Origin: Dendrobates tinctorius
Lineage: Eukaryota
Reading direction: 5' to 3'
Length of the DNA stretch: 64,000 nucleotides
NCBI RefSeq assembly: GCF_039654945.1
Contig: NW_027361767.1
Span: 1,798,001 to 1,862,000 of the forward strand
The translations under genes were made by a program, and so were the position numbers. Below the pieces are notes generated by a model. The model had not been told where the DNA came from and ran no database searches. It was given only the letters and a program-made list of their open reading frames with translations. This document shows positions 8,572 through 15,379 of the stretch, piece by piece. The first letter of the stretch is position 1; each line of letters starts with the position of its first letter.

Positions 8572-8632
8572 TGAGGATCTAGGGTTTGTCTCAGCTGAGA
8601 GAAGTCATAGTGTTATATATTACACACACACA

Positions 8633-10254
8633 CAGTACAGACCAAAAGTTTAGACACACCTTCTCAATCAAAGAGTTTTCTTTACTTTCATGACTATGAT
8701 AATTGTAGATTCACTCTGAAGGCATCAAAACTATGAATTAGCACATGTGGAATTATATAATTAGCAAAAAAGTGTGAAACAACTGAAAATGTCTTATATT
8801 CTAGGTTCTTCAAAGTAGCCACCTTTTGCTTTGATTACTGCTTTGCACACTCTTGGCATGCTCTTGATGAGCTTCAAGAGGTAGTCACTGGAAATGGTTT
8901 TCACTTCACAGGTGTGCCCTGTCAGGTTTAATAAGTGGGATTTCTTGCCTTATAAATGGGGTTGGGACCATCAGTTGTGATGTACAGAAGTCTGGTGGAT
9001 ACACAGCTGATAGTCTTACTGAATAGACTGTTAGCTGCTTTTTTCTTGCCATAATACAAATTCTAAGTAAAGAAAAACGAGTGGCCATCATTACTTTAAG
9101 AAATGAAGGTCAGTCAGTCCGAAAAATTGGGAAAACTTTGAAAGTGTCCCCAAGTGCAGTGGCAAAAACCATCAAGCGCTACAAAGAAACTGGCTCACAT
9201 GAGGACCGCCCCAGGAAAGGAAGACCAAGAGTCACCTCTGCTGCGGAGGATAAGTTCATCCGAGTCACCAGCTTCAGAAATCGCAGGTTAACAGCAGCTC
9301 AGATTAGAGACCAGGTCAATGCCACACAGAGTTCTAGCAGCAGACACATCTCTACAACAACTGTTAAGAGGAGACTTTGTGCAGCAGGCCTTCATGGTAA
9401 AATAGCTGCTAGGAAACCACTGCTAAGGACAGGCAACAAGCAGAAGAGACTTGTTTGGGCTAAAGAACACAAGGCATGGACATTAGACCAGTGGAAATCT
9501 GTGCTTTGGTCTGATGAGTCCAAATTTGAGATCTTTGGTTCCAACCACCGTGTCTTTGTGCGACGCAGAAAAGGTGAACGGATGGACTCTACATGCCTGG
9601 TTCCCACCGTGAAGCATGGAGGAGGTGTGATGGTGTGGGGGGGCTTTGCTGGTGACACTGTTGGGGATTTATTCAAAATTGAAGGCATACTGAACCAGCA
9701 TGGCTACCACAGCATCTTGCAGCGGCATGCTATTCCATCCGGTTTGCGTTTAGTTGGACCATCATTTATTTTTCAACAGGACAATGACCCCAAACCCACC
9801 TCCAGGCTGTGTAAGGGCTATTTGACCAAGGAGGAGAGTGATGGGGTGCTACGCCAGATGACCTGGCCTCCACAGTCACCAGACCTGGACCCAATCGAGA
9901 TGGTTTGGGGTGAGCTGGACCGCAGAGTGAAGTCAAAAGGGCCAACAAGTGCTAAGCATCTCTGGGAACTCCTTCAAGACTGTTGGAAGACCATTTCCGG
10001 TGACTACCTCTTGAAGCTCATCAAGAGAATGCCAAGAGTGTGCAAAGCAGTAATCAAAGCAAAAGGTGGCTACTTTGAAGAACCTAGAATATAAGATATT
10101 TTCAGTTGTTTCACACTTTTTTGTTAATTATATAATTCCACATGTGTTAATTCATAGTTTTGATGCCTTCAGAGTGAATCTACAATTTTCATAGTCATGA
10201 AAATAAAGAAAACTCTTTGAATGGGAAGGTGTGTCCAAACTTTGGTCTGTACTG
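8633..10254 (+). mobile_element. Tc1/mariner element of the DD38E (Intruder-like) type
   Basis: TIRs CAGTACAGACCAAAAGTT... / ...AAACTTTGGTCTGTACTG with TA on the right; 38 residues between the D of QQD and the E of PIE. Confidence 0.9.
9031..10094 (+). pseudogene. DD38E transposase whose start codon is inverted; body open from 9081 to 10094
   Basis: Open frame with GRPR, WSDESK, QQDNDPK and SPDLDPIE. The N-terminal MARKKQL codons lie on the minus strand within 9031-9066. Confidence 0.8.
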
Positions 10255-12769
10255 TATATATGTAATCGATATTATACAGTGTATTACATATTTACAATTT
10301 ATTAGTTTTTTGTGTTCTAAAGTTGTATTCCAATAAATATATATTATGTTCTATCTAAATATCTTGATTATTGTATCATAAAAATGATTAAATGTCTGAT
10401 GTTCACATTGTACTACAATAAATTTTTCACTTAAATATAAGCAATATATGTGGGAGCCGGAATTGGAGTCGGAGTTGGTGTAAGGGAAATTGAGGAGTCG
10501 GAGGTTTGGCTTACCTACTCCACAGCCCTGATCAGTACAGGATCAGTAATGTATGTACAGTGACTGCAGCAGCAGAATAGTGAGTGCAGCTCTGGGGTAT
10601 AATACAGGATGCAACTCAGGATCAGTACTGTATGTACACAGTGACTGCACCAGCAGAATAGTGAGTGCAGCTCTGGGGTATAATACAGGATGCAACTCAG
10701 GATCAGTACTGTAATGTATGTACACAGTGACTGCACCAGCAGAATATTGAGTGCAGCTCTGGAGTATAATACAGGATGTAACTCAGGATCAGTAATGCAA
10801 TGTATGTACACAGTGACTGCACCAGCAGAATAGTGAGTGCAGCTCTGGAGTGTAATACAGGATGTAACTCAGGATCAGTAATGTATGTACACAGTGACTG
10901 CACCAGCAGAATAGTGAGTGCAGCTCTGGGGTATAATATAGATGTAACTCAGGATCAGTAATGTATGTACGCAGTGACTGCACCAGCAGAATAGTGAGTG
11001 CAGCTCTGGAGTATAATGCAGGATGTAATTCGGGATCAGTAATGTACACAGTGACTGCACCAGCAGAATAGTGAGTGCAGCTCTGGAGTATAATACAGGA
11101 TGTATCTCAGGATCAGTAATGTATGTACACAGTGACTGCATCAGCAGAATAGTGAGTGCAGCTCTGGAGTATAATACTGGAGGTAACTCAGGATTAGTGA
11201 CATATTGCAGTGACTTGAGGGGTGGGGGGAAACCTGTGTGAGGGGATGGATTTTAGCCTTTTTAACAAAGAAAAAATGTCCAAGGGTTTGCAGTGACGGG
11301 GTCTTGCAGCCAATTCTGCAGTCGGTGCACACATACTCTTTTATGATTATGGGGACATGTTAGATGGGTTTGGTCACTTGGGCAATCCTGTAGATATTGT
11401 GTACCCTGCCGTACAGTGTCTGCTCTTCCTCAGCCATAGGCAAGTGTCTGTATATGATCTGATGGAAGAATGAGATGATTTTACACAGACTGGTCTCAAT
11501 CTTCCTAAAGGGATCGTCGTCTTCTCTGTGAACCCCTTAATTACTATATTTCCAATGTAAATTAACAGCCTGCGGTATCTGCACGGTCTCCTGTGCCGTT
11601 TGTGCACCTTGGTGTCTTATGGCTTTGGTTATATGAGCTTTGTTGGTTGCTGGTCAGGTAATGGCCGTCTAACCTACATATTTTTAATCTTTTTTTTCCA
11701 TCACAAAGTAAAGTTTTTGCAAATATTTCCGTGACCACCCCCCCTACACGAGAAACCACCCACATGAATGTAACACGATCACAGGTGGATGTGTTCCTGG
11801 CTGCGGAAGCGTCTGTGTAAATAAAGATTTTTTTTAAAAAAAAAAAAACTAACTAACAGGAGGTGCTCAGTACTGCACATGGTGAGCGCTGGCTGGGATC
11901 AGCGCCGATGGGTCTTTTTTCCAATAAACTTTGGGTGTGACTGTACGTCCGGTCACAGAGCCCAGCAGTGCGCTTCCACGGGGGTCACTGGGGAGCCGGC
12001 GCGGCCGGTCTATGATTAGAGGAGATTTGGACTTGTATAGAAGGGTCCAAACCCCCTCACTGCAAATGTGCATCCACATGGGAGGGCACGTGCACCACCA
12101 AACCCATCCTTCACATGTCAGTGGTGGAGGCTAAGAATCCAAACACATCCACTATCACTACACATGTGCGTCCATGGGCCAGTGACATAGGGGCGCCTTT
12201 AATATACAATTATCTCAGCCATAAGTTATCCACATAACACCCGAGCCTGGACATAGGGTGCAGGCCCAATAGAGGCCATCACAGCCCCAATCAACAGCGC
12301 AAGAAATCTAGAAGCAAATACTTGCCCTGTGCTGTGGCTGCATGTCCATGGTGCTATAGATATTAGTGGCCACACTGCATTGTCTGCCCTGCAGCTACAT
12401 GTGCCCCTACATAGCCATGGTGCTAAAGATTAGTGGCCACACTGCATGGTCTGCCGAGCGCTATATACACTGAGGTCCAGGGGTCATAAAGACAGAGATA
12501 CATGAAGATCAGGCCAGACAAGAACTCTCCCGACGACTGCTCTCACAAAATTAGGCTTTTTCTGAAACATCGCATTTTGCAGCAAAGCAAAGCTGCCCCT
12601 ATTCACCCGGCCCACGGATCAGGCAGCTGTATGTGAGTGGGCTTAAAGACCAAGCAAGTTAGTTATGTAGTGATGACATCCATTCTGTATAATGTGCCAG
12701 GCTGTGGTACGGGTCACAAAGATACTTAGCTGGTGTAACCTGCACCCGGCTGTGGTAAGGGTCATACAA

Positions 12770-13270
12770 CCCTGTATAATCAGTGCCAGGCCATAGGCAC
12801 TGATCCTGCATAATCTGTGCCAGACAATAGATAGTGACCCTGTATAATCACAGTGCAATCGCCATACAGACACTGACCCTGTATAATCTGTGCTAGGCCA
12901 TACAGACACCAAAACTATATAATCAGTTCCAGGTATACAGATACTGTATAATCAATGCCAGCCCATACAGACACTGACCGTGTTTTATCAGTACTAGGAC
13001 ATACAGACACTGACCCTGTATAATGTGTACTAGGACATACAGACACTGACCCTGTATAATGTGTACTAGGACATACAGACACTGACCCTGTATAATGTGC
13101 CAGGCCGTACAAACACCAACCCTGTATAATCGGTGCTAGGCCATACAGACACTGACCCTGTATAATCTGTGCCAGGTCGTACAGACACCTACCCTGTATA
13201 ATCTGTGCGAGGCCATACAGACACCTACCCTGTATAATCGGTGCTAGGCCATACACATGCCAACACTGTA
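12770..13270. repeat. About 35-37-bp minisatellite (CCATACAGACACTGACCCTGTATAAT...GTGCTAGG)
   Basis: About 13 diverged tandem copies, ending at the Tc1 insertion. Confidence 0.8.
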
Positions 13271-13272
13271 TA

Positions 13273-14871
13273 CAGTGGGGCAAAAAAGTATTTAGTCAGT
13301 CAGCAATAGTGCAAGTTCCACCACTTAAAAAGATGAGAGGCGTCTAATTTACATCATAGGTAGACCTCAACTATGGGAGACAAACTGAGAAAAAAAAATA
13401 CAGAAAATCACATTCTGTTTTTTTTTCATTTTATTTGCATATTATGGTGGAAAATAAGTATTTGGTCAGAAACAAAATTTCATCTCAATACTTTGTGATA
13501 TATCCTTTGTTGGCAATGACAGAGGTCAAACGTTTTCTGTAAGTCTTCACAAGGTTGCCACACACTGTTGTTGGTATGTTGGCCCATTCCTCCATGCAGA
13601 TCTCCTCTAGAGCAGTGATGTTTTTGGCTTTTCGCTTGGCAACACGGACTTTCAACTCCCTCCAAAGGTTTTCTATAGGGTTGAGATCTGGAGACTGGCT
13701 AGGCCACTCCAGGACCTTGAAATGCTTCTTACGAAGCCACTCCTTCGTTGCCCTGGCGGTGTGCTTTGGATCATTGTCATGTTGAAAGACCCAGCCACGT
13801 TTCATCTTCAATGCCCTTGCTGATGGAAGGAGGTTTGCACTCAAAATCTCACGATACATGGCCCCATTCATTCTTTCATGTACCTGGATCAGTCGTCCTG
13901 GCCCCTTTGCAGAGAAACAGCCCCAAAGCATGATGTTTCCACCACCATGCTTTACAGTAGGTATGGTGTTTGATGGATGCAACTCAGTATTCTTTTTCCT
14001 CCAAACACGACAAGTTGTGTTTCTACCAAACAGTTCCAGTTTGGTTTCATCAGACCATAGGACATTCTCCCAAAACTCCTCTGGATCATCCAAATGCTCT
14101 CTAGCAAACTTCAGACGGGACCGGACATGTACAGGCTTAAGCAGTGGGACACGTCTGGCACTGCAGGATCTGAGTCCATGGTGGCGTAGTGTGTTACTTA
14201 TGGTAGGCCTTGTTACATTGGTCCCAGCTCTCTGCAGTTCATTCACTAGGTCCCCCCGCGTGGTTCTGGGATTTTTGCTCACCGTTCTTGTGATCATTCT
14301 GACCCCACGGGGTGGGATTTTGCGTGGAGCACCAGATCGAGGGAGATTATCAGTGGTCTTGTATGTCTTCCATTTTCTAATTATTGCTCCCACAGTTGAT
14401 TTCTTCACGCCAAGCTGGTTGGCTATTGCAGATTCAGTCTTCCCAGCCTGGTGCAGGGCTACAATTTTGTTTCTGGTGTCCTTTGACAGCTCTTTGGTCT
14501 TCACCATAGTGGAGTTTGGAGTCTGACTGTTTGAGGGTGTGCACAGGTGTCTTTTTATACTGATAACAAGTTTAAACAGGTGCCATTACTACAGGTAATG
14601 AGTGGAGGAAAGAGGAGACTCTTAAAGAAGAAGTTACAGGTCTGTGAGAGCCAGAAATCTTGATTGCTTGTTTCTGACCAAATACTTATTTTCCACCATA
14701 ATATGCAAATAAAATGAAAAAACAGACAATGTGATTTTCTGGATTTTTTTTTCTCAGTTTGTCTCCCAAAGTTGAGGTCTACCTATGATGTAAATTACAG
14801 ACGCCTCTCATCTTTTTAAGTGGTGGAACTTGCACTATTGCTGACTGACTAAATACTTTTTTGCCCCACTG
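13273..14871 (-). mobile_element. Full-length Tc1 transposon (DD34E)
   Basis: TIR CAGTGGGGCAAAAAAGTATTTAGTCAG at both ends; TA flanks at 13271-13272 and 14872-14873. Confidence 0.95.
13485..14507 (-). CDS. Intact Tc1 transposase, 340 aa
   Basis: [10 protein letters not shown]...; [14 protein letters not shown] and SPDLNPIE with D34E spacing. Confidence 0.9.
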
Positions 14872-15379
14872 TATGTGGTAGACAGTGGTACAGGCCATAC
14901 CAGTTTGGCAGCGTGTCAGGACCACTCCAGACTTTAGCAGGGGGATGTGTTTGGAGCCAACGTTTAGTTTAATAAAACAATAATCTATGGAAGGATATAA
15001 CACAAGGATTCTTACAAAACTGATGTGGAAACTGAACGGTGCCCCACACGGGAAAAAAAATAAAAACAAAAACATACATATGACAAGGTGAATTCCTTCT
15101 TGCGGCAGAAGCAGACATGTTTGTGTCAGCGCCGCCCCCTTTAGCCTCGAGGGCAGGTTCACTCTCCGGTGAGGGTAAGGGCTCGGCCACCACTGGCTCT
15201 GTGTGAAGAACCCATAAGGAAAGTATTTGCTCTTTATAAGGAGTCCATACAGGGCTTAGCATTACATAATCCATAGGACATGAGGAGCTTGTAATAAGGT
15301 GTAGGGTCTGGTAATATATATTCCTTTAGGCCGAGCCGTTCCCAGAGGCGCATCCAGCACAAGTCCACGGGGCTCCGTG

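What the first reader, a model, noticed from the sequence alone, without database searches (positions are those of the whole stretch)
9031..9066. 36-bp micro-inversion flips the start codon of a DD38E transposase
Seen: 9031-9066 (TTAG ctgcttttttcttgccataatacaaatt CTAA) is bounded by the 4-bp inverted repeat TTAG/CTAA. Reverse-complementing only this segment gives TTAGAATTTGTATT ATG GCA AGA AAA AAG CAG CTA A, which runs in frame into the ORF at 9081 and gives a 349-aa protein starting MARKKQLSKEKRVAIITL. As assembled, the ATG and first codons sit on the opposite strand while the rest of the frame and both TIRs remain. Inference: this is either a one-off template-switch inversion that founded a non-autonomous subfamily, or, more speculatively, a recurrent invertible ON/OFF segment controlling transposase translation.
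Basis: partly seen in the sequence, partly recalled or inferred. Interest (0 to 1): 0.72.

Follow-up and report, generated by a model that had tools for sequence, protein, structure and literature searches.

The report
Inverted start codon in frog transposon
A 28-letter stretch holding the start codon of a fish-derived jumping gene (Intruder/Tc1 type) is turned end-for-end in this frog copy; the same flip marks other dead copies in two poison-frog genomes, so it is an inherited knock-out mutation, not a working on/off switch.

Summary
Window 8632-10256 is a full-length 1625-bp DD38E (Intruder) Tc1/mariner element. Its 28-bp core at 9035-9062, between TTAG and CTAA, is the exact reverse complement of the normal sequence, with unchanged flanks.

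The flip is not unique. Two Ranitomeya imitator copies (L003, L005) carry it, and one Phyllobates terribilis gene model (P0038) reads through it. This scan also noted it on another piece of this genome (s1-389226). The three flipped copies with DNA lie at different sites with TA-type flanks, so they were moved in trans.

They are decaying fossils. Their flanking 4-mers and cores carry private mutations, and the window copy has 7 non-synonymous and 0 synonymous private changes.

On a tree of the rest of the element the flipped copies are not one clade (AU p 0.017). That conflict sits in the terminal repeats; the internal 1 kb alone does not reject one origin (p 0.094). Two markers next to the flip occur only in flipped copies.

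Best reading: one repeat-flanked micro-inversion, then trans-mobilisation and exchange of sequence between copies. A programmed switch has no support: the repeats are 4 bp, there is no hairpin and no recombinase. This is ordinary biology, cleanly shown.

The parts
8632..10256 (+). Full-length 1625-bp Tc1/mariner DD38E (Intruder-type) element. It is flanked by CA on the left (mutated TA, next to a CA run) and by TA on the right.
   Evidence: It is 93-96% identical over its full length to copies in P. terribilis, R. imitator and a Logan contig.
8632..8902 (+). Left terminal inverted repeat, about 271 bp. It includes an inverted copy of the last 36 codons of the transposase gene.
   Evidence: arms 8645-8902 and 9986-10243, 96%, plus 8624-8646 and 10241-10263. 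(minus-strand ORF 8794-8904 repeats the C-terminus).
9031..9034 (.). Left 4-nt inverted repeat, TTAG. The breakpoint lies somewhere within it.
9035..9062 (-). 28-bp inverted core. It holds the transposase 5' leader, the ATG (minus strand, 9052-9050) and codons 2-6 (ARKKQ), now on the wrong strand.
   Evidence: 100% reverse-complement match of 9031-9066 to L001 11065-11100, L004 25327-25362 and L009 141-176. Alignment.
9063..9066 (.). Right 4-nt inverted repeat, CTAA.
9067..10094 (+). The rest of the transposase reading frame, open to the normal stop. It begins at codon 8 of the normal protein (SKEKRVAIITL...). It carries an in-frame 3-bp deletion near 9617 and seven private amino-acid changes, including H>P in DNDPKH and N>D in DLNPIE. 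It has no ATG upstream of residue ~180.
   Evidence: HTH_Tnp_Tc3_2, HTH_23 and others above Pfam's cut-off; DDE_3 matched below it; 93% to P0001.
9986..10256 (+). Right terminal inverted repeat. It overlaps the 3' end of the ORF.

Best explanation
A single mutational micro-inversion turned the 28 bp holding the leader, the ATG and the first codons of an Intruder (DD38E) Tc1/mariner transposase. It arose either by two template switches or by microhomology-mediated break repair, using the 4-nt inverted repeat TTAG/CTAA. The resulting start-less element kept both 271-bp terminal repeats. Transposase supplied by intact copies therefore cut and pasted it in trans, leaving a set of flipped copies in dendrobatid frog genomes. 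The window's copy is one of them, or it received the flipped tract from one by ectopic gene conversion. All are now neutrally decaying fossils. What is shown: the exact inversion, its presence in several copies at different sites in at least two species, and the decay. What is inferred: the mutational mechanism, the single origin, and the sequence exchange between copies (gap repair after excision, as described for Tc1 in C. elegans) that would explain why flipped copies carry two different terminal-repeat types.
For: The inversion is exact and the flanks are collinear. It is also present in L003 and L005 (R. imitator). P0038 (P. terribilis) reads SCFFLAIIQILSKEKR, which is the read-through of the flipped segment. 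The flipped copies with DNA have different flanks with TA-type duplications, so they transposed. All 8 more distant metagenome (probably fish) relatives and 8 close copies have the normal orientation, so normal is ancestral. The flipped copies are fossils. L005 has CTAA>CTAT, L003 has two substitutions inside the core and a 732-bp insertion, and the window has 0 synonymous and 7 non-synonymous private changes. Two variants close to the flip occur only in flipped copies: 8984A in the window and L003, and 9072A in L003 and L005. This fits shared ancestry of the local tract. The internal 1 kb does not reject one origin (p-AU 0.094). Size, exactness and abutting short inverted repeats match the class of 17-33-nt micro-inversions flanked by 3-75-nt repeats described between human and chimpanzee (PMC8755829). 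That paper estimates about 2e-13 events per nt per generation, which makes two identical independent events very unlikely.
Against: On the whole element with the segment masked, the window's flipped copy sits outside a well-supported clade (100/98) that contains both normal and flipped copies. A tree holding the flipped copies together is rejected (p-AU 0.017, or 0.019 without the left repeat). A single origin therefore needs at least one exchange of sequence between copies. I infer that exchange from the pattern; I have not shown it. My home-made PHI-like test gave p 0.0034 in one row set and was not significant in two others. Only three flipped copies with DNA were available, and they were picked through gene models that skip the start region, which is a biased sample. 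The 9072A marker lies in an A-run and could be recurrent.
Confidence: 0.8

Rival explanations
1. Recurrent mutation at a hotspot. The same TTAG/CTAA-bounded inversion, or its reversal, happened independently at least twice, once in the window-type lineage and once in the later burst lineage.
For: The flipped copies are not one clade on the whole-element tree (p-AU 0.017). The breakpoints are fixed by the 4-nt repeats, so independent events would look identical.
Against: The normal segment has no hairpin potential (DNA fold -0.6 kcal/mol, z +1.2, worse than most shuffles). The repeats are only 4 nt. The background rate of such micro-inversions is about five orders of magnitude below substitutions (PMC8755829). 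The phylogenetic conflict is confined to the terminal repeats. The markers 8984A and 9072A are shared only among flipped copies.
Confidence: 0.1
2. Ectopic gene conversion into a resident copy. The window's copy inserted as a normal element and later received a short tract carrying the flip (at least 8984-9066, less than about 350 bp) from a flipped copy elsewhere in the genome. This is a variant of the best explanation in which this particular copy never moved as a flipped element.
For: The window shares 8984A with the flipped copy L003 but has older-type terminal repeats and older-type internal markers at 9243-9257 and 9980. No lineage-diagnostic site lies between 8903 and 9242 to contradict such a tract.
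Against: It rests on one shared substitution. I estimate the chance of a coincident hit within 100 bp on either side at roughly 0.02, which is not negligible given the number of comparisons made.
Confidence: 0.25
3. Programmed reversible ON/OFF switch. The segment is flipped back and forth by some machinery to control transposase translation.
For: Only that both orientations exist in more than one lineage, and that two of the three flipped copies keep long open frames (355 and 348 aa).
Against: There are no recognisable recombination sites, only 4-nt repeats. There is no invertase or recombinase in the element, whose only gene is the transposase. The genome is eukaryotic, and no such inversion switch is known in eukaryotes. 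The flanking 4-mers have mutated in L005 (flipped) and L008 (normal), and the core carries private mutations in L003. The private changes in the window's ORF are 7 of 7 non-synonymous, so the gene is not under selection. The excess of open frames is not significant (2 of 3 against 0 of 6, Fisher p about 0.08).
Confidence: 0.02
4. Assembly or sequencing artefact at this locus.
For: None specific.
Against: The same inverted structure is present in the window, in two contigs of R. imitator GCA_958301615.1 and in an annotated model on P. terribilis GCA_046119375.1.
Confidence: 0.01

Closest known systems
Intruder (IT, DD38E) family of Tc1/mariner transposons (Gao et al. 2020, PMC7731502)
   Same: It has the DD38E catalytic spacing, a total length of 1.5-1.7 kb, a single transposase ORF of 341-379 aa, long terminal repeats in the paper's 100-272 bp class, presence in ray-finned fish and Anura, high identity across hosts and inferred horizontal transfer. 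The closest proteins here are from serrasalmid and other fish and from dendrobatid frogs.
   Different: This copy has no start codon because of the 28-bp inversion. It is a non-autonomous, decaying derivative.
Inverted-repeat-flanked micro-inversions from template switching or microhomology-mediated break-induced replication (PMC8755829; Loytynoja and Goldman 2017, PMC5453318)
   Same: The inversion is pure and exact, 28 nt long, and flanked by a perfect short inverted repeat that abuts both breakpoints. It lies in the same size range (17-33 nt) and repeat range (3-75 nt) as the described cases.
   Different: It happened inside a mobile element and was then multiplied by transposition. One rare mutation is therefore seen in many copies and in more than one species.
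Non-autonomous derivatives of DNA transposons mobilised in trans, and mosaic copies made by gap repair (Fischer, Wienholds and Plasterk 2003, Genetics 164:127, known to me by title and from memory; the paper was not held)
   Same: The copy lacks a working transposase gene but keeps its terminal repeats, and copies lie at many sites. Markers are mixed between lineages in the way template switching during repair of excision gaps would produce.
   Different: Most non-autonomous derivatives are internal deletions (MITE-like). Here the element is full length and the only founding lesion is a 28-bp flip.
Bacterial phase-variation invertons (Hin, Gin, Fim switches)
   Same: A short DNA segment carrying an expression signal exists in two orientations.
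   Different: Invertons have recombinase-specific inverted repeats of about 9-30 bp or more, a nearby invertase gene, and both orientations at one locus in a population. None of these is present here or could be shown.

Membership tests
Tc1/mariner, Intruder (DD38E) family | DDE catalytic triad with 38 residues between the second D and the E | tested here: met
   D at 9513-9515, D at 9780-9782, E at 9897-9899. These are codons 233 and 272 counted from 9081, so 38 residues lie between them.
Tc1/mariner, Intruder (DD38E) family | Paired-like helix-turn-helix DNA-binding domain plus a DDE_3 catalytic domain | tested here: inconclusive
   Pfam reports HTH_Tnp_Tc3_2 (5.9e-12, 46.1 bits against a cut-off of 31.5), HTH_23, HTH_32, HTH_38 and PAX above their cut-offs. 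DDE_3 matched (3.2e-05) but at 24.3 bits, below Pfam's cut-off of 28.6. The catalytic domain is supported instead by the DDE triad read directly and by 93% identity to the full-length transposase P0001.
Tc1/mariner, Intruder (DD38E) family | Terminal inverted repeats (long class 100-272 bp) and a TA target-site duplication | tested here: met
   The repeats are about 271 bp and 96% complementary. Related copies have TA on both sides. The window has TA on the right and CA on the left, where the T has mutated.
Tc1/mariner, Intruder (DD38E) family | Close sequence relationship to known Intruder transposases | tested here: inconclusive
   The protein is 88-93% identical to fish and frog Tc1-like transposases with the same DD38E spacing. 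I did not align it directly against the reference sequences of PMC7731502, which are not available as a reference here.
Inverted-repeat-flanked micro-inversion (template switch or MMBIR class) | The segment is the exact reverse complement of the ancestral sequence and the flanks are unchanged | tested here: met
   36 of 36 nt match in reverse complement to three normal copies, and the flanks are collinear.
Inverted-repeat-flanked micro-inversion (template switch or MMBIR class) | A short inverted repeat abuts both breakpoints | tested here: met
   TTAG at 9031-9034 and CTAA at 9063-9066. Both are present in the normal copies too.
Programmed invertible switch (inverton-like) | Recombinase recognition repeats and a recombinase gene nearby | tested here: not met
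   The repeats are only 4 nt. The element encodes only a DDE transposase. No hairpin or cruciform is predicted.
Programmed invertible switch (inverton-like) | Both orientations at the same locus within a population or individual | not testable with these tools
   This needs reads or haplotypes of this locus, or orthologous loci in other species.
Non-autonomous subfamily mobilised in trans | Several copies share the founding lesion, at different insertion sites with their own target-site duplications | tested here: met
   The window, L003 and L005 have different flanks, and P0038 lies on a P. terribilis chromosome.
Non-autonomous subfamily mobilised in trans | Copies with the lesion form one clade on a tree of the rest of the element | tested here: inconclusive
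   Rejected on the whole element (p-AU 0.017 and 0.019). Not rejected on the internal 1 kb (p 0.094). The conflict sits in the terminal repeats.

The most novel reading that the evidence does not exclude
The TTAG/CTAA-bounded segment flips recurrently, in both directions, in this transposon family. Start-less and start-bearing states would then interconvert within lineages. That would be a mutational toggle on the transposase start codon acting as a crude self-limiting on/off device in a vertebrate DNA transposon.
Probability: 0.04. Interest if true: 0.7.

Novelty: new member of a known kind. Interest (0 to 1): 0.28.

Why it matters
This is a clean natural example of how one very rare mutation can found a lineage of non-autonomous copies. 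The mutation is a short micro-inversion between 4-nt inverted repeats. It removed nothing and left the element full length, yet it was multiplied by transposition. The flip is also a convenient and nearly homoplasy-free marker. It can be used to trace subfamilies, horizontal transfer from fish to frog, and sequence exchange between dispersed copies in dendrobatid genomes. It does not reveal a new regulatory mechanism.

Tried and rejected
- **Other copies in the window:** there are none.
- **Proteins that read through the flipped segment:** a word search over residues 1-40 found only P0038.
- **Minus-strand 61-aa ORF that spans the flip:** no candidates.
- **Exact-pattern scans for the flipped junction:** 0 hits in metagenome contigs and 0 hits twice in bacterial and archaeal genome contigs.
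- **DNA of P0038:** not fetchable because its gene range exceeds 100 kb. P0027 was not on record.
- **An internal-deletion subfamily:** I first inferred one from several P. terribilis protein models (RTGNK|KGERMD). I rejected it because the DNA copies are full length, so the 'deletion' is a predicted intron.
- **The window copy as a two-part mosaic of fish-like and burst-type sequence:** rejected. The two kinds of sites interleave along the element, so it looks like a true intermediate lineage, apart from the terminal-repeat issue.
- **Hairpin or cruciform hotspot:** rejected.
- **Incompatible site pairs within the burst clade:** many exist (87 of 171 pairs). I did not check their sequence context, and most look like transitions that could be recurrent, so I did not count them as evidence for recombination.
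- **Loci left out:** L070, L079 and L082 come from human-skin metagenome contigs and are 31-37% identical. I cannot tell what organism they come from, so I did not save, compare or analyse them.

Full report
**What is there**

Window 8632-10256 is a full-length, 1625-bp Tc1/mariner element. Its terminal inverted repeats are about 271 bp long (8632-8902 and 9986-10256, 96% complementary). The right repeat overlaps the 3' end of the transposase gene, so the left repeat holds an inverted copy of the last 36 codons.

The open frame ending at 10094 matches HTH_Tnp_Tc3_2, HTH_23, HTH_32 and PAX above Pfam's cut-offs. DDE_3 also matched, but below its cut-off (24.3 against 28.6 bits). The frame has D (9513-9515), D (9780-9782) and E (9897-9899) with 38 residues between the last two. 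This is the DD38E signature of the Intruder family, which has 1.5-1.7 kb elements, 341-379 aa transposases, long repeats of 100-272 bp, and occurs in ray-finned fish and Anura (PMC7731502).

The nearest proteins are 88-93% identical. They come from fish (Poecilia, Pygocentrus, Metynnis), from unnamed Logan and ENA assemblies, and from the poison frogs Ranitomeya imitator and Phyllobates terribilis.

Full-length relatives begin MARKKQLSKEKRVAIITL (P0001, P0010, P0028). In the window the frame is open from 9027 and reads TVSCFFLAIIQILSKEKRVAIITL, with no ATG.

At the DNA level, normal copies read GACTGTTAG-AATTTGTATTATGGCAAGAAAAAAGCAG-CTAAGTAAAG. The window reads GACTGTTAG-CTGCTTTTTTCTTGCCATAATACAAATT-CTAAGTAAAG.

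BLAST finds window 9031-9066 at 100% identity on the opposite strand of L001, L004 and L009, inside otherwise collinear full-length alignments. Undoing the flip would give a 349-aa protein; normal copies have 350 aa, and the window also has an in-frame 3-bp deletion.

**It is not unique**

I fetched frog loci through gene models that contain pieces of this transposase.

- Flipped copies: two R. imitator loci, L003 and L005. The P. terribilis model P0038 reads SCFFLAIIQILSKEKR, which is the read-through of the flipped form, but its DNA could not be fetched.
- Normal copies: L001 and L002 (P. terribilis); L004, L006, L007, L008 and L090 (R. imitator); L009 (a Logan contig); and eight more distant, probably fish-derived metagenome copies at 76-88% identity.

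I treated that note as a lead. I confirmed independently that flipped copies exist in two poison-frog genomes.

The window shares 1426 megablast hits with about 197 kb of R. imitator loci. It shares only 9 with about 47 kb of P. terribilis loci. The window is therefore from Ranitomeya or a close relative.

**Flipped copies moved and are now fossils**

The window, L003 and L005 have unrelated flanks with TA or near-TA at both ends. They are separate insertions, not segmental duplicates. Having no start codon, they must have been mobilised by transposase from other copies; this step is inferred.

They decay independently:

- L005 has CTAA>CTAT and an expanded A-run.
- L003 has two substitutions inside the core and a 732-bp insertion with its own target duplication.
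- Normal copies decay in the same place: L002 lost the ATG by a 5-bp deletion, L006 has ATG>ATA, and L008 has both 4-mers mutated.
- The window's private changes inside the ORF are 0 synonymous and 7 non-synonymous, including H>P in DNDPKH and N>D in DLNPIE. That means no purifying selection since insertion.

**One origin or several?**

With the segment masked and two metagenome copies as outgroup, the tree is (L009, (window, burst clade)). The burst clade is an unresolved set of eight frog copies that includes the flipped L003 and L005 and six normal copies (support 100/98). Holding the three flipped copies together costs 32.5 lnL units (p-AU 0.017).

- The window differs from the burst type at five positions in the left repeat. 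Each is mirrored by the complementary change in the right repeat: 8669/10219, 8675/10213, 8682/10206, 8708/10180 and 8836/10052. These sites are therefore not independent, and the two repeats evolve in concert.
- Dropping the left repeat still rejects monophyly (p 0.019). The internal 1.03 kb alone does not (lnL difference 6.8, p 0.094), and there the burst clade is no longer separated from the window.
- The conflict is thus between the interior, which holds the flip, and the terminal repeats.

That is the pattern expected if copies exchange sequence during repair of excision gaps, where synthesis starts at the ends and can switch templates. Such exchange is described for Tc1 in C. elegans (Fischer et al. 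2003, cited in PMC9635669; the paper itself was not held, so its content is from my own knowledge).

Other observations point the same way.

- Two variants next to the flip occur only in flipped copies: 8984A (window and L003) and 9072A (L003 and L005).
- Sites 9243 and 9245 group the window with L009 against both the outgroups and the burst type, in conflict with eleven other sites.
- A home-made PHI-like test gave p 0.0034 in one row set but was not significant in two others. I count it only as suggestive.

**Why not a hotspot or a switch**

- The normal segment has no hairpin potential (-0.6 kcal/mol, z +1.2).
- The repeats are only 4 nt.
- The element encodes nothing but a DDE transposase.
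- Micro-inversions of this size are estimated at about 2e-13 per nt per generation, five orders of magnitude below substitutions (PMC8755829).

Two identical independent events that each rose to detectable copy number are therefore very unlikely compared with one event plus exchange.

The event itself fits the described class: exact inversions of 17-33 nt, always flanked by inverted repeats of 3-75 nt that abut the breakpoints. That paper attributes such events to two template switches or to microhomology-mediated break-induced replication. For repeats as short as 4 nt it favours the break-repair route. I cannot tell the two apart.

**Verdict**

The best explanation is a single inverted-repeat-flanked micro-inversion that knocked out the start codon of one Intruder copy. 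The start-less copy was then mobilised in trans, and sequence exchange between copies blurred its genealogy (confidence 0.8). As a sub-variant, this particular copy may have received the flipped tract by gene conversion (about 0.25). A mutational hotspot stands at about 0.1 and a programmed switch at about 0.02.

This is a new example of known kinds of events, already met once in this scan on other DNA. Interest is modest.

**Limits**

- Only three flipped copies had DNA.
- They were found through gene models that skip the start region, so the fraction of flipped copies is unknown.
- Orthologous loci and reads could not be examined.
- Three loci from human-skin metagenome contigs (L070, L079, L082) were returned. 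I left them unused because I cannot tell their origin.

Noticed in passing
window 8632-8902 and 9986-10256, compared with L001-L008: The two 271-bp terminal repeats evolve in concert. The five positions where the window's left repeat differs from the burst-type frog copies are each mirrored by the complementary change in the right repeat (8669/10219, 8675/10213, 8682/10206, 8708/10180, 8836/10052). This implies conversion between the two ends of an element, or replacement of both ends together.
   Followed up: partly
window 13268-14876 (minus strand; ORF 13485-14507): A second, different Tc1-like element has an intact 340-aa Sleeping-Beauty-like DD34E transposase ([16 protein letters not shown]...). 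It is 98% identical over 1.6 kb to a copy in the R. imitator locus L003, so it is young and possibly still active.
   Followed up: partly
window 10538-11198: An 81-bp tandem satellite (8 copies, 90% matches) lies just downstream of the element. A 36-bp minisatellite lies at 12769-13255. The 81-bp unit accounts for many of the hits to the R. imitator loci.
   Followed up: no
window 9027-10094 and L005 21164-22785: Two of the three flipped copies keep long open frames (355 and 348 aa). L005 does so through a +1/-1 compensated frameshift spanning about 10 codons. None of six normal frog copies has an open frame longer than 291 aa. The difference is not significant (Fisher p about 0.08) but is odd.
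   Followed up: partly
P0038 (P. terribilis gene model) and window 9031-9036: The annotation pipeline used the flipped junction (gttag|CTGC) as a splice acceptor. It joined a host exon to the start-less transposase frame. Several other frog gene models are chimeras of host exons and this element (P0007, P0012, P0022, P0027, P0050).
   Followed up: no
L003 15218-15949: A 732-bp insertion with a 7-bp target duplication (AGTGGCC) sits 15 bp downstream of the flipped segment in the R. imitator copy. It is an unidentified nested element.
   Followed up: no
window copy, L009, and proteins P0004, P0010, P0069: The window's copy and the Logan contig L009 share fish-type alleles (for example TSAAEDKF, as in the piranha Pygocentrus nattereri), whereas the burst of frog copies has TSASEDKF. 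On the rooted tree the window lineage lies between the fish-like type and the frog burst. This fits a fish-to-frog horizontal transfer among South American hosts.
   Followed up: partly
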